The translations under genes were made by a program, and so were the position numbers. 64,000 nucleotides of DNA from Oikopleura dioica. Its lineage: Eukaryota; Animalia; Chordata. Of the stretch, positions 7,179 to 64,000 are shown piece by piece (within the stretch, counting starts at the first letter, position 1; the number at the start of each line of letters is the position of its first letter). Where the stretch lies: positions 868,001-932,000 of the forward strand of contig OU015566.1 in assembly GCA_907165135.1 (NCBI GenBank), given 5' to 3'. The notes beneath the pieces are model-generated. The model did not search any database and had not been told where the DNA came from. It saw only the letters and a list, made by a program, of their open reading frames with translations.

Positions 7179-7209
7179 GTTTTGTTATTATTTTCATAAA
7201 TTTATCGTC

Positions 7210-7400
7210 TCTAGAATGGTCACATGATTGTCACGTGTTGTTTTTAAGGATGGGGGTATATAAACAAATGTTGACGGAAATCTCTTCATTATGAGACTTT
7301 CTCTCCTGGCGGTAACCAGTTGGCAGTGAAGAATAGTTCTGACAATTGAGAAATTTAAAGCGATTGTCAGCTATCTCCACTGTTCCCTGGAAATCAGCCC
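7210..7400 (+). repeat. ~190-bp direct repeat, copy 1, containing a ~75-nt hairpin (7316-7390); candidate ncRNA
   Basis: Aligns with 10891-11085; stem CAGTG..CTGACAAT / ATTGTCAG..CACTG. Confidence 0.7.
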
Positions 7401-7625: not shown

Positions 7626-10600
7626 ATGATTGGAGAGGATTATCAAATGGAACATTTCGACGAGAATTTTGAAGAAGAAGATTATTTGCTAGATGATGTT
7701 GACACAGATGTTGACACAATAGAAGATGACGAAGATAAGCAGAAGGATGAAAGACCAGTTTTAAAAGAAGACAAAGCAGAATGCAGGACTTTGGGGATGA
7801 AACATTTGACGCAAAATACTCGCAATCAAAAGTAGAGTGAACCCTAGTTGTTCCCCTTTTAAAATTGTTTTTAAGAATCTCTCAGCCACCTGAGCTGAGC
7901 AAAGATAAAATAGAAAAATGGCTGCCCGGTTTTATCTCGAAGTTAAAAAGGACAACTTCCAGGACGACGATTTGTCGATTGATTGAGTCGGTCATGAGGC
8001 AAGAACTCAAAGATGATTGGAATGCGTATTTGTGGGAAGTGTTCGGATTTAAGGGCAAAAAAGGCTACATTTTCCGTCCAGACAGAGAAGAAATTGAATC
8101 TTTCGAAATCACCGCTTACCAAAACCATCTTCTCTCGACAGAACCTCATCTCAGAAATATTTATATAAATAGATCTGATCTGAAAGAAGAGACTGGAGAA
8201 TGGAGTCTTCATCCTGATCATGTACCAACAAAAATTTCTGAAGGAGGTGAAGCGCTCATTCTAACACAGAAATTTGGGAAGAAAGAGTATGCAGTTCGGG
8301 TTCAGGTTTTTGACCCCTATCTTTTCAGTGATTATTACGATCACAAATATGTTCATCATAAAATTCATTTAGCTTCAGGTATCATGCTTTCTTATATAAA
8401 AAAAAACTAAGATTTAAGGTTATATAAGAGCTATAGACCGAACATCTTCTTTTCCAGAAAAATCCGAAAATGAAAAACAGATTCCAATTCACGAAAATGT
8501 CGTGAAAAACTTTGTCAATATTGAGCTTTTTCATGGCTGTGACAAGTTAATGACGGATTGTATTGGCTGGATAACAATTATGGAAAAATGTGATAAAACT
8601 ATTCGTCCTTTATTGAAAAAGAAAAACCGACTCGACTTGGAGCAAAGAAAAAAAATGGCTTTTGGTAGGCTTCGTGATTAAGGATCCCCCGTCAGCTCTT
8701 TCCTTCATAAAATGGAAATTTTAAAAAAAATACCATATTTTTCGTTCTTAATGCGTTCTCTGGTTAAATTTGCTTCAAAAACTTGCAAAGAGGAATTTTT
8801 GACCAAGAAAAAATCAATATTTTCGCCATAATTTGGGCAAATTCGTCAATTTTTGCGAAAAATCCAATTTTCAAACGCGATTTTGAGGTTGTTAGAGTCG
8901 AGATAGACTCCCAAAAAATTGTTTTTTGACCCGTAGAATCCATTTCCGGGGTCAAAACTTAAAAAATCCGAAATTTGATTTTTCGAAAAAAGCTGACGGG
9001 GGTCCTTAAGAACATTCTATAAAACATATTTTGTCATATAATAAGAATAGGGCTAGATTTTAAGCTGCATAAGTTCATTTAGAAATTTTAGAAATATGGA
9101 GTGGGCTTGATTATTTACGGTCGATTGGGATTGATCATTTTGATCGAAAATTGCAAAACTTCTTGCTTCTAAAAAAAGTGGTCAAAATATGTGACTTTGG
9201 ACTTGTAAATGAACGAAGTGGACGAATCGGCTACCGCGAAATGGGTTATTCTAGGAGAGGTTCCAAGTTTAGGAATACCTACGCACTTGGTGATGTTCAT
9301 TTGATGTATTTTATTTAATTTTGATTCTAGCCGCTGGATCACCAGCCTTTTCTTGTCAATGGCAGCTGACTCTTTCAGAAGGGAATGTTATCCAGCCATT
9401 TGCATATTTCCTGTTGGGCGAATGGAAAACCGCTTGGACTCTGCTATTTAAACCAATAGATCACAGCGAACGAAGAAAAATAGAAGAGAAGCTTAAGGTT
9501 AATTTAGATTTAAAAAAATTCATAAAAGAAAAGTTTTTTTTTTAGAAATTTGGATCGATGAATATAATTGATCTTGCAACAGATAAAAAACAGTGTAGGT
9601 GCCAATATTTTGTGAATTGTCAATTATACGAGAACTTCTATTCCGGGTTAAACGACATCATATGTCTTCAAGATTTAACATCTGATTATTGTTTGAATGA
9701 TCCGAACCTCACCAAATCCTGCCACATGGCCGCTCTTAAACGAAATATGGCAGAATATAAAAGCTTCAATTTGACGATGAAAAACCTGTCTCGAAATATC
9801 CTCAATCAGAACTTCAGTAACCTCTGTGTCCCAATTTCAGTCACGACTCTTATTCGTCATGCGATGAAAAATGATCTTGGTTTTGTTGAGAAAAAGATAA
9901 CTCATTCGTTCGAACAAATTCTAACTATAATCGTGATGCTTGTTTACCCAAGAAGCATGGCTGGTTTGAATCTTAACCCGAACAAGGAAGAAACTAAAAA
10001 TCAACTCACTGCGATTGATGATCTTTTAACACGGATTTGCCGAAGAACATATTTGATGGATTCAGGTTGGGAAATTATCAGAATGCTCGGACCAGATAAT
10101 CATCCAAGACCGGCGAAATCAAATTGCATATGCAAACGAGGTCGGTTTTACAGTCAAGCTTTATTTTCAATATCGTCTTTTAAGTTTATCTCAATGAGAA
10201 TTTTAACTTTACCCGACCGGTTACCGCTACTGGCGTGATTCTAACTATTGATGGCGAAATTTTCACCAAATGACAATCGACAGAATTGAGAAGAACGCAT
10301 ACGTTCTTCAAAACTCGGATTTTAATGAGGAAAATCCTTTGAAATCAGTCAAGGGTTAAAGACTTTTTGATTCTAAGAGTACCGATGAAAATTTAATAAC
10401 CTGATTCTCCGGAAATTTCGACAAGAAATGGCGGAACCAGTCAAAATTGAGAAAAGATAAACCCCTCAAAAGTTATCCGAATCAAAAAGACCAATCCTTA
10501 TTACGATAACTACGATTTCGTTCGACAATATTATGACGACCTAACAAGAATTGCTCTATACGAAAACGATAACTTGAGATTAAAACTCGTGAACGAGCAT

Positions 10601-10692
10601 TCATCTATCGGAAATATCATATTTCAAATATGGAAGTCAATACTTGGTATCTTATGCCGATGGCGTATACTCTTCATCTTGAGAAAGTTTAA
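7626..10692 (+). CDS. Protein kinase-like domain fused to a C-terminal papain-fold (clan CA) cysteine protease-like domain; two apparent 1-nt frameshifts in the 3' part
   Basis: Kinase: EGGEALI, YAVRVQ, WITIMEKCD, HFDRKLQNFLL, CDFGL, AGSP. Protease: LNQNFSNLCVPIS (Q-x5-C), FHQM, YVLQNS. Frame breaks near 10260 and 10613. Confidence 0.8.
8682..9005. mobile_element. MITE family K, complete copy in an intron of the kinase-protease gene
   Basis: TTAA-GGATCCCCCGTCAGCT ... AGCTGACGGGGGTCC-TTAA. Confidence 0.9.
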
Positions 10693-10890
10693 ATAAAAGA
10701 AAAATGTTTGTCTGTTTGTTTCTAATTGCAGTTGATTTATAAAAATTAGAAGGAACTTTTTAAAAGAAAAAATTATAACTTATAATTTATAAGAGAATGA
10801 CTTTAAAGTCAATTCTAACGACAGAAACTAATTTTGCTTGTAGCCAAAGGAGATTTAAAGAATTGAAATGGATGTTAGGATTTTTGCTTC

Positions 10891-11085
10891 TCTAGAATGG
10901 TCATTTGATGGTTACGTATCGTCATTAGGGATTGGAGTTTTGGAACAATTATTGACGAAATTTTCTGCATTGTTTTTTTTTTCCTTCCTGGCAGTAACCA
11001 GTTGACAGTGAAGAATAGTTCTGGCAATTGAGAAATTGAAACCGATTGTCAGCTTACTCCACTGTTCCCTGGAAACTGACCCTTC
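10891..11085 (+). repeat. ~190-bp direct repeat, copy 2, with hairpin 10998-11072
   Basis: Homologous to 7210-7400; the hairpin portion is the best-conserved part. Confidence 0.7.
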
Positions 11086-41989: not shown

Positions 41990-43830
41990 AATTCTTATGT
42001 TAGGATTGCATCTCAATGATTCTCCTGAAAAAAACTGGACCTTCGCAAACAAAAGCATTAAAATCTTTCGCAAACTATTTTCACACCTGCAACAGAAAAG
42101 TTTGTCCGCGAATAACAATTGTAAATAATTTCGTAAACACTCTCTTTGAAAATTTTCGGCGCGTTGAGATTTTGCTTGAGCTGTCGCTTTTCTTATTTCT
42201 CATGGAAGGATGCAATAAGCCAGGCTCCAAGATCTGAAAAACTTAATCAGAAGTGATGCCCGGGTCGAAAAATCAGTTTCATTATTAAGGTTCCCCCCCC
42301 GTCAGCTCTTTCCTTCAAAAATGGAAATATTCAAAAACACATTATTTTTGGTTCTTAACGCGTCCTCAGGTTAAACTTGCTTCAGAAACTTGTTAGGAGG
42401 AATATTTGACCAAGAAAGATCAATATTTTTGCCAAAATTAGGGCAAATTCGTCAATTTTCGGCGAAAAATCCAATTTTCAAATGCAATTTTGGTAAAGAA
42501 ATAGTCGAAATAGACCACAAAAAATGAAGCCTTAAAATCGTTTTTGACCCGTAGAATCCATTTCCGGGGTCAAAATTTTATAATCCCGAAACAAGATTAT
42601 TCGAAAAAAGCTGACGGGGGTCCTTAATAATTATTGATTATTATTTTTCTGCTCAAAATTTAATTCAAACGATTATTCCTTCGGGACCCCCGCCCCTTCA
42701 GCTTTTTTCGAAAAATCAAATTTCGGAATTTTAGAATTTTGACCCTGGGGTCTATCTCGCTTCTAACACCCCCAATATCGTATTCGAAAATTGGACTTTT
42801 CGCTAAAAATTGACGAATTTGCCCTTATTTTGGCATAAATATTGATTTTTCTTGATCAAAAATTCCTCTTATCAAGATTATGAGTTTTTAAACAATGGTC
42901 TAAATTTATTATTTTTATTTTGGTTCTTTGTTATCATTAAATCAAATCTGATTTCCTAACAGATAGTTATTTGGGATAATTTATTTCCTTTCATTTGAAC
43001 ATAACTTATGTTACATAAGGTATAAAATTCAAGTTCTGATTGGAAATGGACCACTTCAAATGGTAAAAGCGTTCAAAAAATTATTACGTAAGCGAGGAAA
43101 GGGTCAGACAGGTATAACTTGATCGATGGTGCCTTTAATGATACCGGTCTGAAACCCAAGAATTTATCAGACTCACGTGCGGTTTGGGGGCATTTGAATG
43201 CAATATCTACCTCAGTACTTCAGTAGGGAGTAAAAATGTGTTTGGAAGTAGAAAATCAATCTTGAGGGCGATAAGAAAAACTGATTATTCTCTTCTTTCG
43301 ACTCGGGGAGAGATTTCTTATCTTGATAAGATGTTGAATTTTTCCGTATTTTTTCAAGAGACTTAGTCATATCTTCAAGTTGAATCGTATTTTGTCGTCT
43401 AAAATGACGATAAATAGAATTATGCTTATCCATGTAACATGTTCTTGGCAAGCAGCCAGAATTCTGTAAAAAAGGTTGAAGTGTTTAAAGTCTACCAGGA
43501 AGCCCCAAACAGTTCTTATCTTACCACCAGACCACGTGGTTGGTCATTCCCGTTGCGCTGTTCTGACGTAACAACATCTGAAGCTCAATCATCTTGGATT
43601 TAAATCTTCATTTCATGCACCAGTGGCTTCGATAATGTTTTGACAGGTTTTGAGTTCATAGGCTGTTTTTTTCAAAGATCTGGTAATCGGATTAAATCGC
43701 ATTCGACACCTTCATTTTCGACAAGAAAGAAAAAAGGCAGAATGGAATATTCAAAAACTTACGTGATCGTTGATGAACCAAGAAAATAGTTTTCGACCCG
43801 ACGCGCACCTTTTTTCGTCAGTACCTGATT
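41990..43830 (-). CDS. Possible uncharacterised multi-exon gene
   Basis: Exon-like frames (VLTKKGARRVENYFLG; SLKKTAYELKTCQNIIEAT; GCLPRTCYMDKH...; ESDKFLGFRPVSLKAPSIKLY) with GT-AG edges; no family recognised. Confidence 0.3.
42289..42623. mobile_element. MITE family K, complete copy; a partial copy follows at about 42684-42870
   Basis: TTAA-GGTTCCCCCCCCGTCAGCT ... AGCTGACGGGGGTCC-TTAA. Confidence 0.88.
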
Positions 43831-52839: not shown

Positions 52840-53175
52840 GGACCCCCCGTCAGCTTTTTGTTTCGAAAGACGGAAATTTTTAAAAATACCATATTTTTGG
52901 TTCTTAATGGGTCCTCAGGTTAAACTTGCTTCAAATTCTTGTTAAGAGGACTTTTTGACCAAGAAAAATCAATATTTTTGCCAAAATTAGGGCAGATTCG
53001 TCAATTTTCGGCGAAAAGTCCAATTTTCAATTGAGATTTTGGGGTTGAAGGAGTCGAGATAGACCCCTAAAAAATAAAGCCTCAAAATCGTTTTTTGACC
53101 CGTTGAATCCATTTGCGGGGTCAGAATTTTAAAATTCCGAAATTTGATTTTCGAAAAAAGCTGACGGGGAGGTCC
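52840..53175. mobile_element. MITE family K, complete copy
   Basis: TTAA-GGACCCCCCGTCAGCT ... AGCTGACGGGGAGGTCC-TTTAA. Confidence 0.88.
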
Positions 53176-54089
53176 TTTAACCATATGAAAACCATAAAAA
53201 TCATTTAAATCGAATGAGACTGCAATTTATAAAAATAAGCAATTTGAGAAATTTTATCAATTTAAACAATTTGTTTCGGACTTTGAACTTCTTTCGTCAA
53301 TATTGCTGCCTTTAGATTTGAAATCCGCCCCCTCGATAAACCCCGGGTAGAGCTCATGGCAGCTCAGGATATGATCGAGGTACCCCTAATTAGATCTTAT
53401 GATCATATTTTTTCTTAGTTACCTAATCGAAGATTCGTCTTCTCAATTGTCAATTTGTCCTCTTCCTTGATTCTTGCCTCCCTCTTTGTCGCATAAATTT
53501 CTCGCTCAATTATGTTGTTTCGCTTTTGAAAAATCTTCTTTTCCGAATCAACCGCCGAAGCTCCTAATTTTGGTGAGTAAAATTCGATCATTTAGCGAAG
53601 AAGAGAAAACTGAAAACAGTTACAGTCAGATTTTGCGGGCGGAAATACTTAAGTCCGGAGTTATCGCTTTATGGAGAAGGTGAGTCAATATGAAGATGGA
53701 AATGAAGACATCTTACTGACGCCAAGCTACTGTAAGAAGCAAAAAAGCCGTTCGAAATCATGAAAAATTACCAATATCATCTGCAAACCCCATTTTCTCT
53801 CTTCAAAAATCGAGTGAAAAAGTTAGTTTCTCAATACAAAATTTACTCTGGCTCAAGAATCAAGAATGGCCAGCTGAAATCTCAAGGAGCGGCTTTTCTT
53901 TGTCCCGGGGAAGGTGCGTATTCACCCAGCTCATCCAGACCGGATTATTCCACGACAGAAGGATTTCCGCTAGAATTAAAGAACGCTTTTCAGATTTGAC
54001 TCAAAAGAGTCATGAATCTGCCGCAAAAATAGATTCTTTTCTCTTTCCTCCTATGGCCTTACCTTAGTCAGATTCTAAAGAGCCTAAAT

Positions 54090-55359: not shown

Positions 55360-57053
55360 TTAACAGGAGCCGATAGCATTGACAGAACCATCAGAGCAGC
55401 ACTCTTTAATGCTCGAGTCGTAGATTTTCGACCCCGCGCAGCATTGGTTTCCAGAACCGTCGTTTGCAAACCGCATTGGGAATCTAGAAATGACAAATAA
55501 TACATGGCCTCTTCGACCCTCTCACCTGTTGGGAAACTCTCCGCAGCACTGTTTGAAATGATTTGGCGATCCGTGATTCGTGTTCATTCTTCCAAGGCAC
55601 TTGGTTCGGCTATCGAATCCTCCGTAGAACGCATGGTGGGCGGAATTCCATCCATCATCACTGGATGAAGCGGGGTCGAGTCCCATGGCAAGTGCTTTAT
55701 CGCATTCACAAGTGTTTCGTCGGCAGGAACCTGGTCTGTTTTCTGAAAGTTTAATTTGAAATGATACCCTTATTTTAGCAAGAAAAACTTACGGCATTCA
55801 ATTTCGGGCTTGCCAGTTACGGAGTCGTAGAATGCTCTGAACTTGTATCCGGTTTCTTCGGGCACACAAGAAGACGACTCTTGGAAAAATGAATCATTGA
55901 AAAAATGTGGGTTTTACCTCCTGCATCAGCTTTGACACAGGCGTAACAATCTTTGTGGTGCTTGCAAGTTTTATCGACGTTATCTTCGAGAAGATTGAAA
56001 ATTTAAAAAACCATAAAAAGATTTAATTTTTTGCTCTTTTGTATTTTCAGGAATATAAAACGCTGATTTTCTAAAGATAACAAAAGATTCCGCAGCGACC
56101 GCACTATAGGCTATAGCCTATAGGAATTTGTGAACTACTAAATTTGATATCAAAATATATTCAATCTGTCCTTGAGGCTTTCCACTTCCCTGTCTAAGCG
56201 GGTAGTCACCCATCTGAAAGCACCAGCAGCCATAAGTCCAGTATCTCGTGATATTGCTCTATAAACACCTCTCATTTACTCGCAAAAGAAACCTTCTACC
56301 TGGGAGTCGATAAAGTTGATCATACTCTCCATGTGAGAATATCTTCTGAGCAAATTTGGCGAGAGAACAGATCGCAATTCTGGCTCGTCAAAGATGGAAA
56401 TTTTCGGGGTTCCTCGGCCGGTTGGACCGCCGGAGACGGGAAATTCGCCCTGGAATCGGGGTACTTTTTCTTCCGCATATCGCGCTCCTATGGAAATTTA
56501 TCAGTTTTAAGGGGGTCCGGATTGGTTTCGGAGAATATAATATAATATAATATAGAAAACCAATGGGGACACCCTTAAGGAGCCCCCCGTCAGCTGTTTC
56601 CTTCGAAAAATTGAAATTTTTAAAAACACCAATTTTTGATTCTTAATGCGTCCCCAAGTTAAACTTGCTTCAAAAACTTGATAAGACGAAGATTCTAACA
56701 AGAAAAATCGATATTTTTGCCAATAGTAGGGCAAATTCGTCAATTTTCGGCGAAAAGCCCAATTTTCAATTGCGATTTTGAGGGTCTTAGAGTCGAGATA
56801 GACCCAAAATAAGCAGGGTCAAAATCGTTTTTTGACCCGTAGAATCCATTTCCGGGGTCAAAATTCAAAATTCCGAAATTTTATTTTTCAAAAAAAGCTG
56901 ACGGGGGGTGGTCCTTAAGGGGGTCCCCATTGGTATCGAAATATAATATGATATAATATAAACGGATTGGGACACCCTTAATGATATCTCTTTTTCTTTA
57001 CCTCGTCCAGCAGCGACGACACCCAGAAGAAGGGTTTTAGTGGTCAAAATCAT
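55360..57053 (-). CDS. Secreted phospholipase A2-like protein with D49K substitution and Cys-rich C-terminal extension
   Basis: Signal MILTTKTLLLGVVAA; YWTYGCWCFQMG; GKPQDNVDKTCKHHKDCY; CRRNTCECDKALA; tail KQCCGEFPNRFP...CCAGSKIYD..KECCSDG. Confidence 0.85.
56509..56985. mobile_element. Three abutting TTAA-flanked elements: ~65-bp mini element, family K MITE (56579-56914), ~65-bp mini element
   Basis: TTAA-GGGGGTCC..ATATAATATAAT..GGACACCC-TTAA-[K]-TTAA-GGGGGTCCCC..ATATAAT..GGACACCC-TTAA. Confidence 0.8.
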
Positions 57054-60851: not shown

Positions 60852-63800
60852 TTACATCAAATCACATGAACTTTCAATTTTATCATCTGAATCAGATTTT
60901 GATGGATTTATAAGGGTGATGGAGTAAGCTTGCGGAAGAAGGTACCAAGTTTCTGTTTTCATGTGTTGATAGTGTTCATTGACGAGAGCATTGAACATGT
61001 TATCTTCGTTGTAGACATAATCGTTAAATTTTTTTAAACAGGCAATCATCATTTCTTCTGATACGTAATAGGGATTCGTCAACGGAATTTTAAGTTGAGC
61101 CGAAGGAATGTTAATCAAACTGTTTGAGATGATGAAGTTTCTGTTTTCGACTCGATCGAGAACCATTTGGTGAAAATCGACCTCGCCCGTAGGATGTAGA
61201 AAAGCGCCTGTTACTGTGAGAGGTCGTTCGAATACAAAATTGGTGTGGAGATGAACTTAAAAATATTTAGATCATAGTAAAATAAAGTTAAGAATTATAC
61301 TTTGTTTGTAGGAGAAAACTGGTTTCGAGTATTCATAAAAATAATTTTTGTTTGAAGTGTTTATGATGTCCCATCCACTTTTCATAAGATACGTCTCGAA
61401 TTTAAGTCTTTTAAGAAGTGTCTCAATATCGTTGCATTGGAAGTCTTGTTCACGTTTATTGGGATTAAGATTAAATCCAGCCATGCTTCGAGGATAAATT
61501 ATCATTGTCAAAATAGCCAAAAGCTTCTCCAGAGAAAAACAATCATCCAATTTATCAGCTGGAATGTTTAGATCATTCTTTATTGCCCATCTTAAGATCA
61601 CACTGACGGATATCGGAACGCAAAGATCGGTTTCCTTCTGATTCAAAACTCTTCTGGTGACATTTTTGAAATCGAAATTAAGATGTCTCGACAACTGCTG
61701 TTCTTCTCGACAACGATTGTTCTTTCAAAGAAATGATCTTCGGTATGTGACATAACATGGCAACTATGTTCTTTTTTGTAGAATATTATTGTCTAACTTC
61801 ATAAGCTTTTCCAAACAATTTGAGTCTTTTAAGGACCCCCGTCAACTTTTTCGAAAATCAAATTTTAATATTTAAAAATTTTGACCCCGGAAATGGATTT
61901 AACGGGTCAAAAAATAATTCTGTCGAAAAATTTGATTTTTCTTGGTCCGAAATTCCTCTTATCGAGTTTGTGAAGCAATTCTAGCTTGAGGACGCTTTGA
62001 GAACAAAAAATTTGGTGTTCTTAAAAATTTCCATTTTTCAAACGAAGAAGGTGGGAAGTCGATGAAATTACTCAGATAAATCTCGAATGAATCACAAATT
62101 GTTTATCCTTATCATACAGCCGTATTTGTCATTTAACCAATCAGGCCTTCGGCACTCTGGCGAATAATTTCGGGTTACCTTAACATTTTAAAAAGTATTT
62201 GAATGAAATATGTAATAAGTACAATTATTTTCCTCTTTGACATTTTAGGTCCCAAATTTTCATGAAAATGGCCACAAAAATGGGCAAGAGTCTTCAAAAA
62301 AATATTCCGCCGTAAAGGCTTAAATTTTTTTCTTCGATAAATGTCTCTTTTGAAAATGGCAAATTTAATCATCGGGCTGTTAATGTGTGGGCTGCTAGGT
62401 TTTAGAAAAAAATTGTAGGGACAAATGACGAGATCGAGCGTCAAAGTCGACCTGACTAAGTGTTTTTAGCTATTTTAAGTCGACATTTTCCGATTTTTGG
62501 TCATTTTTGGCATTTTTTTGAAGATGATTTGATTCCAATGTGATTTTTACGCTAGAAATAGATTGTTCGAGAAAAATATTATTTTATTTCATAGACTAAC
62601 TGTAAGTTAACGCCGAAAATTAATAATCATTACTTAATTCTTGACCACCACCCCCTTAAGATGAAGAAAATGTCCACAAAATTTAGGTCCACAAAAGAGG
62701 AAAAACAATATCTAGTATATTATTTGTGTCAGTTACTTTTATAATCTCCGAATGTATTTTTCGTTTATCGGATTTAGTAATAGGTTTGTAAAGAAGGCTC
62801 CATGCTGTTTTCCAATCGCAAAATAGGAAAACATATATGCTGCTTATATGACCGTTTGGATCAGTTTCACTTCCCAAAAGTTTCTCTGACGATCGAGAAA
62901 TAATTTGAGGACTATTACAAAATCCAGGGGTTCCCGCGACTAAAAAATAATCTTGACAAATAAACGGGAAATCAAAGACCTTACATAAGTACTCCTCTGA
63001 TCTATATTTGCTTCCTCTTCTTGCGTATCCCATCTCAAAATAACTTTCCCTTATAGTTCTGATTTCAACAAGTCCGAAGTCAATCCATTTTGGTTCATTT
63101 TTGAAAAGAAGTATATTTTCTAGTTTTTCGTCATAATGAAGCAATCCAGTCCGATAAAGATAAATATGTCCATTTGCAACGCCGTTTGCAATTTCGATCC
63201 TCTCCATTATTGATAAATCTTCATTTTTTAGCCTGGACCTTAGATCAGAATCGCATTTTTCCATGATTGTTATCCATCCAACACAATCATCATTTGAGTA
63301 AATTTCGACGTTAGAAAAATTTTTTATGACATTTTTATGATAAGGAATAACTTTTTCTTTATCCTTTTTCTTAGGAATATAAAGATCAGGCAAATCGTCT
63401 TTAAAGGATTGATCATCGTAAGCGTTATTTTATACTTATAAATTCTCTAAACAATATAAGTACGTTAATAAAACTTGACTCGTTTGAGAAACATCAGGTG
63501 CTGCTTATCGATTCAATAGATAAGCTCGCGAGGTAGAAAGATTATTCCGAGTTGAAAAGCAAAGTCGCAGCATTAGAAGAAGAGAGAATGAAATAATTAT
63601 TGCAAATGATTATTCTGATAATTTTTCTAGTTTACAAGAAAGTATTTCCGATAAGATATCAAACCCACTCAAAACTTGTTGATTCAAAAGGACCATCTTT
63701 AAAAGGATAAGGCTTCTCTGCCTCTTTCGCAATTTTGTAATCTATGTAAATTTGAAGACTAAATCGCATGAATTATTTACCTTTTGATAGATATGTGCGA

Positions 63801-63900
63801 AAAGAAAGCGTCTTATCTTTCTTTGAGAAGAGAGTTGTATCAAAAGTTTGAATTCGAATCGCAACCTCAAAGCGGGAGTTACTGAATAGCGCCGCCTTTT
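60852..63900 (-). CDS. Second kinase-like + papain-fold protease-like gene (paralog of 7626-10692); frame disruptions, 5' end unresolved
   Basis: VAIRIQTFD, WITIMEKCD, HYDEKLENILL, WIDFGL, AGTPG; LNQKETDLCVPISV, IIYPRSMAG.NLNPNK, DFHQMVLD, FIISNS, TWYLLPQAYS. Confidence 0.8.
61833..62045. mobile_element. MITE family K, partial copy in an intron of the second kinase-protease gene
   Basis: TTAA-GGACCCCCGTCAAC...TTTTGACCCCGGAAATGGATT. Confidence 0.75.
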
Positions 63901-64000
63901 CAGCAGTTATGAAAGATTTTCGGCGTTACAATGAAGATTTTCTGTTTTTTATCAAAACTCATATTTAAGTTTATACATATACAGTAGAGAGTAGTTAATT

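What the first reader, a model, noticed from the sequence alone, without database searches (positions are those of the whole stretch)
7626..10692. Protein kinase fused to a papain-fold cysteine protease domain
Seen: after a kinase-like domain comes LNQNFSNLCVPIS (Gln six residues before Cys, the papain Q19/C25 spacing), then FHQMTID and YVLQNS, matching papain H159 and the N175-S motif. No signal peptide or propeptide is visible, so the protein is probably cytosolic. The paralog at 60852-63900 conserves Q, C, H and N while surrounding residues diverge, which suggests selection on a catalytic triad. I do not recognise kinase + clan CA protease as a standard animal architecture. Inference: a lineage-specific signalling or defence protease family in which the kinase-like domain may regulate the protease.
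Basis: partly seen in the sequence, partly recalled or inferred. Interest (0 to 1): 0.8.

Follow-up and report, generated by a model that had tools for sequence, protein, structure and literature searches.

The report
Broken kinase–papain-fold protease gene copy
This gene belongs to a real, undescribed Oikopleura-only family that joins an odd protein kinase to a papain-type cysteine protease domain, but this copy has two frame breaks, one just before the catalytic histidine, so it is probably a dead or truncated copy.

Summary
The Cys box sits in the exon 9546-10140 and the His/Asn box at 10261-10326. A second copy lies at 63925-60855, on the minus strand.

A relative that is 51% identical folds as a papain-like (clan CA) domain. 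All 50 best matches in an exhaustive structure search are clan CA enzymes (Z 9.1-5.5). No single family stands out, and Pfam has no match. Gln, Cys, His and Asn are kept in 91-98% of family members. The kinase part passes Pfam's threshold and folds as a kinase, but it has Arg in place of the VAIK lysine in the members aligned and a shortened C-lobe.

Two bases (10259-10260) stand where whole codons should be, so the reading frame stops at 10271-10273, before the His. A 14-base insertion at 10616-10629 shifts the frame again. Short-read contigs from two samples carry the same sequence, and two RNA runs gave no reads from this copy.

Relatives come only from Oikopleura dioica and marine metagenomes. 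I found no paper on the family. This scan has already reported the family on other DNA of the same genome. Function is untested.

The parts
7626..7831 (+). Proposed exon 1: ATG plus an acidic N-terminal stretch. Hypothetical; it has no counterpart in O. dioica relatives.
   Evidence: ORF. A 44-nt GT-AG intron to 7876 keeps the frame. Homology to relatives begins only at 7856. The position of the relatives' start codon has TGA 7838-7840 and no in-frame ATG.
7876..8378 (+). Exon 2: N-terminal domain and kinase N-lobe, with the glycine loop SEGGEA and Arg at the VAIK position (AVRV).
   Evidence: Aligns with P0003, P0091, P0096 and P0109.
8458..8664 (+). Exon 3: middle of the kinase (GWITIMEKCD segment).
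8700..9060 (.). Dispersed repeat of about 320 nt inside intron 3 (intron 8665-9091).
   Evidence: Read depth about 200 times the flanks in two DNA runs. Seven copies in the window, one of them in the paralog's long intron.
9092..9289 (+). Exon 4: kinase catalytic loop (HFDRKLQN) and DFG.
   Evidence: Pfam Pkinase E 2.3e-8, 34.2 bits, cut-off 31.7.
9331..9497 (+). Exon 5: end of the kinase-like domain (GEWKTAW segment).
9546..10140 (+). Exon 6: linker with the conserved CLNDPNLTKS segment, the Cys box (Gln, then Cys six residues on) and the YPRSMAGLNLNP and SGW motifs. This is the helical half of the papain-like domain.
   Evidence: 63 relatives among 1.84 billion representative proteins, best E 5e-46. 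Alignment.
10185..10258 (+). Exon 7, first part (strands before the His), in frame with exon 6 through a 44-nt GT-AG intron.
10259..10273 (+). Frame break 1. Two bases (10259-10260) stand where relatives have two codons, and the in-frame reading ends at TGA 10271-10273.
   Evidence: No indel in the contigs of runs X1 and X2.
10261..10354 (+). Exon 7, second part, in a shifted frame: His box and the Gln-Asn-Ser motif.
10473..10689 (+). Exon 8: C-terminal strands of the domain. The acceptor choice is uncertain. The 14-nt insertion at 10616-10629 (frame break 2) lies inside it.
60855..63925 (-). Paralog. Kinase part 63925-63776 and 63429-62686; Cys-box exon 61724-61301; His-box exon 61255-60855. 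Its N-terminus is cut by the window end. The conserved linker segment is missing and a remnant of it lies in another frame.
7201..7393 (.). Left copy of a direct repeat of about 190 nt that brackets the gene (right copy 10882-11075).
   Evidence: 91% and 73% identity in two blocks. Only these two copies occur in the window.

Best explanation
The locus 7626-10692 is a disabled copy of an Oikopleura-restricted multi-copy gene family. It is either a pseudogene or makes at most a truncated product.

Intact family members encode one chain of about 640-800 residues with four parts:
- an N-terminal domain of about 125 residues;
- a very divergent protein-kinase-like domain, with Arg in place of the VAIK Lys and a short C-lobe, but with the catalytic-loop Asp, Lys and Asn and the DFG motif kept;
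- a conserved linker;
- a C-terminal papain-fold (clan CA) domain with Gln, Cys, His and Asn in papain order and spacing.

Shown here: the fold, the fusion, the conservation and the two frame breaks.

Inferred: intact members are cytosolic cysteine peptidases or isopeptidases, and the fused kinase-like domain controls their activity or targeting in cis. The many diverged and often broken copies suggest birth-and-death evolution of the kind seen in defence or conflict genes.
For: Gene model. Eight exons with GT-AG introns of 44, 79, 427, 41, 48, 44 and 118 nt read through without a break from 7626 to 10258. They align with O. dioica protein P0109 from residue 7 to 692.

Kinase.
- Pfam Pkinase scores above threshold.
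- The AlphaFold model of P0109:1-400 has pLDDT 78.9. Foldseek gives at least 500 PDB matches at E <= 0.001; all 50 listed are protein kinases, best 6.5e-8.

Protease domain.
- The model of P0005 has pLDDT 75.8, with Cys81 at the N-terminal end of helix 81-96 and His246 in strand 243-254.
- All 50 listed matches of the exhaustive VIA search are clan CA enzymes, for example Der f 1 Z 9.1, xylellain 9.0, PCAT1 C39 domain 8.8, ATG4A 7.9 and UfSP 7.3.
- The atlas search returns C39 clusters.

Conservation: Gln 94/97, Cys 95/97, His 45/47, Asn 42/46.

Fusion in one chain: P0109, P0122, P0124 and P0114 carry every motif. P0048 carries the kinase catalytic loop and the Cys box in one 410-residue product called on a metagenome contig.

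Distribution: only O. dioica and marine metagenome fragments.

Breaks. Both are present in contigs of two DNA runs.

Expression: no reads of this copy in two oligo-dT RNA runs. The only reads laid were partial, 90-99% alike, and ran on into unlike sequence, so they look like paralog transcripts.
Against: - The fold was predicted for a relative (51% identical over the Cys-box exon), not for this copy, because a spliced model has no reference to hand to the fold tool.
- Foldseek alone gave only weak matches (best E 0.05), and Z of 8-9 is in the range the tool calls middling.
- I could not measure the Cys-His distance because coordinates are not returned.
- The two DNA runs come from one study and may be one culture, and one may be the source of the assembly. 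The breaks are therefore shown not to be assembly errors, but not to be fixed in the species.
- Only about 57% of two RNA runs was read, so low or stage-limited expression is not excluded.
- No enzymatic activity of either domain is known.
Confidence: 0.8

Rival explanations
1. The gene is intact and makes the full kinase-protease chain. The two frame changes would then be sequencing errors, or be bypassed by programmed frameshifting or unusual splicing.
For: All conserved motifs downstream of the breaks are still recognisable in the shifted frames, so any inactivation is recent. Break 1 lies in an A3T4 run, a kind of place where long-read assemblies err.
Against: Short-read contigs of two samples match the window with no indel at either place. 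No intron of workable size can restore the frame without removing the His or the conserved strand before it. No RNA reads of this copy were found.
Confidence: 0.07
2. The family's C-terminal domain is a papain-fold enzyme but not a general protease. It could be a deubiquitinase or ubiquitin-like-protein protease, or a transglutaminase, deamidase or acyltransferase of the same clan.
For: ATG4A (Z 7.9), UfSP (7.3, 7.0), ZUFSP and Mug105 (6.7, 6.4) are among the matches, within 1-2 Z units of the C1 and C39 peptidases. The protein is cytosolic by architecture.
Against: The best Z values go to C1 and C39 peptidases. From memory, a Gln six residues before the Cys and an Asn 16 after the His is the arrangement of papain and of C39 peptidases. 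The fold search cannot separate these chemistries.
Confidence: 0.25
3. The kinase-like domain is a catalytically dead pseudokinase that serves only as a scaffold, sensor or decoy for the protease domain.
For: The VAIK position is Arg in 18 of the 24 long relatives scanned by pattern, Lys in one and unmatched in five; it is Arg in all sequences with an N-lobe in the alignment, including both window copies. The model shows that Arg in strand beta-3 and no long alpha-C helix. Only about 70 residues follow the DFG motif. Pfam covers only profile positions 76-160 of 263.
Against: The catalytic-loop Asp, Lys and Asn and the DFG Asp are nearly invariant, which points to retained nucleotide or metal binding or catalysis.
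Confidence: 0.4

Closest known systems
Papain-like cysteine peptidases, clan CA: family C1 (papain, cathepsin B, Der f 1, xylellain)
   Same: Predicted fold (Z 9.1-8.3, 147-163 residues aligned). Cys at the start of the central helix, His on a strand, Gln six residues before the Cys, and Asn 16 after the His followed by Ser/Thr.
   Different: No Pfam PF00112 match and 6-12% identity in the structural alignments. The domain follows a kinase, so it has no signal peptide or I29-type propeptide. The helical insert between Cys and His is longer. The YPRS and GW motifs are invariant and family-specific.
Peptidase C39 domains of bacteriocin ABC exporters (PCAT1, ComA)
   Same: Compact papain-like core with comparable scores (Z 8.8-7.9; atlas TM up to 0.68 by the matched cluster). 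These were also the best Foldseek rows.
   Different: C39 domains are bacterial, fused to ABC transporters and cleave double-glycine leaders. There is no sequence match. The Oikopleura domain is about twice as long.
EDR1-type proteins of plants (EDR1 domain PF14381 fused to a PK_Tyr_Ser-Thr kinase)
   Same: One chain holds a papain-like domain and a protein kinase domain, and EDR1 is a regulator of disease resistance (PMC10318531).
   Different: PF14381 did not match any exon or relative scanned here. Here the papain-like domain follows the kinase; from memory, the EDR1 domain precedes it in EDR1 and CTR1. PMC10318531 groups EDR1 with the C71 and C93 peptidases. From memory, the EDR1 kinase is Raf-like.
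Eukaryotic protein kinases (Pfam PF00069)
   Same: HMM match above threshold and the kinase fold. The catalytic-loop Asp, Lys and Asn and the DFG motif are present.
   Different: Arg at the VAIK position, no predicted alpha-C helix, a short C-lobe, only 13-19% identity to any solved kinase, and no specific kinase group stands out.

Membership tests
Clan CA (papain-like fold) cysteine peptidases | Two-lobed fold with the nucleophile Cys at the N-terminus of a helix and His on a beta-strand of the other lobe | tested here: met
   Tested on relative P0005, not on this copy. AlphaFold pLDDT 75.8, Cys81 at the start of helix 81-96, His246 in strand 243-254. All 50 listed VIA matches are clan CA enzymes, Z 9.1-5.5.
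Clan CA (papain-like fold) cysteine peptidases | Catalytic residues in the order Gln, Cys, His, Asn/Asp, and conserved | tested here: met
   Gln 94/97, Cys 95/97, His 45/47, Asn 42/46 in the family. All four are present in both window copies.
Clan CA (papain-like fold) cysteine peptidases | Cys and His side chains adjacent in space | not testable with these tools
   Model coordinates are not returned. Only secondary structure and alignment ranges are available.
Clan CA (papain-like fold) cysteine peptidases | One uninterrupted reading frame covering both Cys and His in this copy | tested here: not met
   Frameshift at 10259-10260 with a stop at 10271-10273. The same sequence is in the contigs of two DNA runs.
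Clan CA (papain-like fold) cysteine peptidases | Peptidase activity | not testable with these tools
   Needs expression of an intact member and an assay.
MEROPS C1 / Pfam Peptidase_C1 (PF00112) | Match to the family profile | tested here: not met
   No Pfam family at E <= 1 for the exons, or at E <= 0.01 for P0005 and P0059. No PDB sequence match for the profile.
Peptidase C39 (PF03412) | Match to the family profile, and fusion to an ABC exporter | tested here: not met
   No Pfam match. The domain follows a kinase. The similarity is structural only.
Eukaryotic protein kinase (PF00069) | Profile match above the gathering score, and the kinase fold | tested here: met
   34.2 bits against 31.7 for exon 4 alone, and 36.9-43.2 bits in relatives. 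Foldseek gives at least 500 PDB matches at E <= 0.001; all 50 listed are kinases.
Eukaryotic protein kinase (PF00069) | Beta-3 (VAIK) lysine | tested here: not met
   Arg in both window copies and in all aligned relatives with an N-lobe. In the pattern scan it is Arg in 18 of 24 long relatives, Lys in one (P0126, at residue 30, perhaps a chance match) and unmatched in five.
Eukaryotic protein kinase (PF00069) | Catalytic-loop Asp and Asn, and the DFG Asp | tested here: met
   HFDRKLQN and DFG in exon 4. H271, D273, K275 and N278 are at least 90% conserved in alignment A2.
EDR1-type papain-like domain plus kinase (PF14381) | Match to PF14381 | tested here: not met
   No PF14381 hit in any exon or relative scanned. 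Here the papain-like domain is C-terminal to the kinase; EDR1's own domain order is from memory, not from the passage read.

The most novel reading that the evidence does not exclude
Intact members of this family are cytosolic, single-chain surveillance or executioner proteins special to appendicularians. A catalytically odd kinase-like domain would act as sensor or decoy and release a papain-fold protease, perhaps by cleavage at the conserved linker. That would be an animal counterpart to kinase-guard or pseudokinase-executioner logic, evolving by rapid gene birth and death.
Probability: 0.12. Interest if true: 0.8.

Novelty: new variant of a known kind. Interest (0 to 1): 0.45.

Why it matters
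The family joins two very common enzyme folds in an arrangement not in Pfam and not found in the papers searched. It is confined to one animal lineage with a fast-evolving, compact genome. If intact members are active, they would be a new family of clan CA enzymes with a built-in kinase-like regulator, and a candidate lineage-specific defence or signalling system in an abundant marine chordate. This locus adds little to that: it is a decayed copy. Its value is to show that the family turns over, with two lesions here and a doubtful paralog 50 kb away. It also warns that motif reading across frames can hide frameshifts.

Tried and rejected
- Sequence searches of the Cys-box exon and of the family profile against PDB chains gave nothing meaningful.
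- Pfam gave nothing for the C-terminal domain.
- The language-model atlas search was below its recognition threshold. It only hinted at Peptidase_C1 (score 0.88).
- Foldseek against the PDB gave only weak rows, so I relied on the exhaustive aligner.
- My first idea, that the N..N.C....S pattern meant a USP- or UCH-type deubiquitinase, got no support. No USP or UCH chain appears among the 50 listed matches.
- I looked for introns that could bypass either frame break and found none of workable size.
- A first paralog splice model was out of frame by one base and was corrected.
- dN/dS between the two copies was not attempted. At about 50% protein identity the synonymous sites are saturated.
- The joined (spliced) protein of this copy was not sent to any search or fold tool, because it has no reference. 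Exons were searched one by one by reference. The joined reading was built only in local scripts for alignment, with X at the two breaks.
Full report
**What is at the coordinates.** The window is AT-rich eukaryotic DNA. The stretch 7626-10692 holds a multi-exon gene on the + strand. Using frame-preserving GT-AG junctions and the alignment with relatives, I built a model of eight exons:
- 7626-7831
- 7876-8378
- 8458-8664
- 9092-9289
- 9331-9497
- 9546-10140
- 10185-10354
- 10473-10689

The introns are 44, 79, 427, 41, 48, 44 and 118 nt. From 7626 to 10258 this reads through without a stop.

The O. dioica protein P0109 (692 residues) aligns to the locus from its residue 7 to its last residue. 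Homology starts at 7856, upstream of my exon-2 acceptor. The position of the relatives' start codon has TGA (7838-7840) and no in-frame ATG follows until about 7991. The acidic exon 1 is therefore a guess, and the original start may also be lost.

All of them are present. The Cys box, with Gln six residues before the Cys, lies in exon 6. The His box and the Gln-Asn-Ser motif lie at 10261-10326, with His and Asn 16 residues apart. Exon 4 alone matches Pfam Pkinase above the gathering score (34.2 against 31.7 bits).

The paralog is real, but it lies on the minus strand, from 63925 down to 60855. It is 46-50% identical over the blocks that match.

- Break 1. Within exon 7 the strand before the His is in one frame and the His box in another. 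Relatives have two codons between Gly-Glu and Phe-His-Gln-Met. This copy has only the two bases 10259-10260. The frame that carries the kinase and the Cys box therefore ends at TGA 10271-10273, four codons later and before the His.
- Break 2. Near the C-terminus, 14 bases (10616-10629, flanked by the direct repeat AAATAT) split a segment that is otherwise nearly identical to relative P0005. This shifts the frame again.
- No intron of workable size can bypass either break without deleting conserved residues.
- Logan contigs of two DNA runs from different samples of one study cover 8998-10700. One has no difference and no gap. The other has no indel reported at either place. The breaks are therefore in the DNA and are not assembly errors.
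- In two oligo-dT RNA runs (about 57% of each was read), the only reads laid were partial matches, 90-99% alike, on the most conserved segments, and they ran on into unlike sequence. They look like transcripts of other family members, not of this copy.

As it stands, the locus could at most make a product with the kinase-like domain and the helical half of the protease domain.

**The family.** A full HMMER scan of 1.84 billion representative proteins with the Cys-box exon found only 63 relatives. A word search with relative P0005 found 40, and one with the N-terminal 400 residues of P0003 found 26. Every named source is Oikopleura dioica, annotated as 'unnamed protein product', 'Protein kinase domain-containing protein' or 'Uncharacterized protein'. 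The rest are short marine metagenome contigs.

None is closer than about 63% to this copy, and the best-scoring relatives are about 50-59% identical. The family is therefore old and diverged within the lineage.

Several annotated O. dioica proteins carry every motif in one chain: P0109, P0122, P0124 and P0114. P0048 carries the kinase catalytic loop and the Cys box in one 410-residue product called on a metagenome contig, which I take to be an uninterrupted ORF. The fusion is therefore real for the family.

**The protease domain.** I could not hand in the spliced protein of this copy because it has no reference. I folded P0005 instead, which is 51% identical over the Cys-box exon, with a 39-row family alignment.
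- The model has mean pLDDT 75.8. The core is above 85, and the linker and one insert are disordered.
- Cys81 sits at the N-terminal end of helix 81-96. His246 sits in strand 243-254. The Asn position is on the next strand.
- Foldseek against the PDB gave only weak rows, led by C39 and C70 peptidases.
- The exhaustive VIA-align search of 48,161 chains gave 56 chains with Z of 5 or more. All 50 listed are clan CA enzymes: Der f 1 9.1, xylellain 9.0, PCAT1 C39 domain 8.8, cathepsin B 8.5 and 8.3, staphopain 8.0, ATG4A 7.9, IdeS 7.5, UfSP 7.3, ZUFSP family 6.7, streptopain 6.2 and coronavirus PLpro 5.7.
- The atlas search returned C39 clusters.

No single family stands out, and Z of 8-9 is middling by the tool's own note. 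The unanimity of the list and the placement of the residues make the papain-like fold a sound reading.

Across the family, Gln is kept in 94/97, Cys in 95/97, His in 45/47 and Asn in 42/46 sequences that cover the column. The family-specific PRS and GW motifs are as conserved or more. There is no Pfam family for the domain and no PDB sequence match even for the profile.

**The kinase domain.** A model of P0109:1-400 (pLDDT 78.9) gives at least 500 Foldseek matches at E <= 0.001; all 50 listed are protein kinases (Myt1 6.5e-8, DAPK1, NIK, PKR, RIPK3). No group stands out, and identity is 13-19%.

The domain is unusual in four ways:
- The VAIK position is Arg in both window copies and in the relatives aligned. 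By pattern it is Arg in 18 of 24 long relatives, Lys in one and unmatched in five.
- The model shows no long alpha-C helix.
- Only about 70 residues follow the DFG motif.
- Pfam aligns only profile positions 76-160 of 263.

On the other hand, the catalytic-loop His, Asp, Lys and Asn are at least 90% conserved, and DFG or DYG is present in most members scanned. Whether it phosphorylates anything is open.

**The paralog.** Its C-terminal domain reads through with one 45-nt GT-AG intron, and all four residues are present. Between the kinase part and the Cys box lies an intron of about 1 kb that contains the same dispersed repeat as intron 3 of the main copy.

The conserved linker segment is missing. 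A remnant of it lies in another frame just upstream of the Cys-box exon. The paralog is therefore readable only through an alternative acceptor and may be damaged too. Its N-terminus runs off the window.

**How it most likely works.**
- Shown: a lineage-restricted family of single-chain proteins with a kinase-like domain and a papain-fold domain that keeps a complete catalytic set.
- Inferred: intact members are cytosolic cysteine peptidases or isopeptidases under cis control of the kinase-like domain. The conserved linker is a candidate self-cleavage or docking site.
- Suggestive only: many diverged copies with frequent lesions point to birth-and-death evolution, as in defence or conflict genes.

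None of the functional statements has been tested.

**Comparison with what is known.** A survey of papain-like proteins states that plant EDR1 (PF14381) domains are papain-like and often fused to a kinase domain (PMC10318531). 'Kinase plus papain-like domain' therefore has a precedent. PF14381 does not match here, however, and the organisms differ; from memory the domain order is also reversed.

Four full-text searches found no paper on this family in Oikopleura or other appendicularians.

**Earlier notes of this scan.** The scan has reported the same family at several other places of this genome, including other broken copies, and the Arg at the VAIK position for the paralog. I used these as leads and re-derived the points cited here with my own searches.

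**Verdict.**
- The family-level interpretation is supported as to fold and fusion, and untested as to function.
- This copy is probably a pseudogene.

Noticed in passing
window 8700-9060 (intron 3); also 987-1319, 42310-42630, 42693-42883, 52872-53177, 56598-56919 and 61829-62037: A dispersed repeat of about 320 nt, probably a MITE. It has seven copies in the window at 73-85% identity and a read depth about 200 times the flanks. It sits in different introns of the two kinase-protease copies.
   Followed up: partly
window 7201-7393 and 10882-11075: A direct repeat of about 190 nt brackets the gene, 3.68 kb apart, in two blocks of 91% and 73% identity. These are the only two copies in the window. 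It may be the trace of a tandem duplication unit or a conserved flanking element.
   Followed up: partly
window 10607-10635: The 14-nt frame-breaking insertion is flanked by the 6-nt direct repeat AAATAT. That fits replication slippage or a transposon footprint.
   Followed up: no
window 8685: One contig of DNA run X1 carries ten extra C after 8685, inside intron 3. It may be a homopolymer length variant or an assembly artefact.
   Followed up: no
window 61715-61770 (minus strand): A remnant of the conserved linker exon of the paralog (resembling the family's ..KIISLP.. segment) lies in a frame that runs into a stop. This suggests a deletion with frameshift in the paralog as well.
   Followed up: partly
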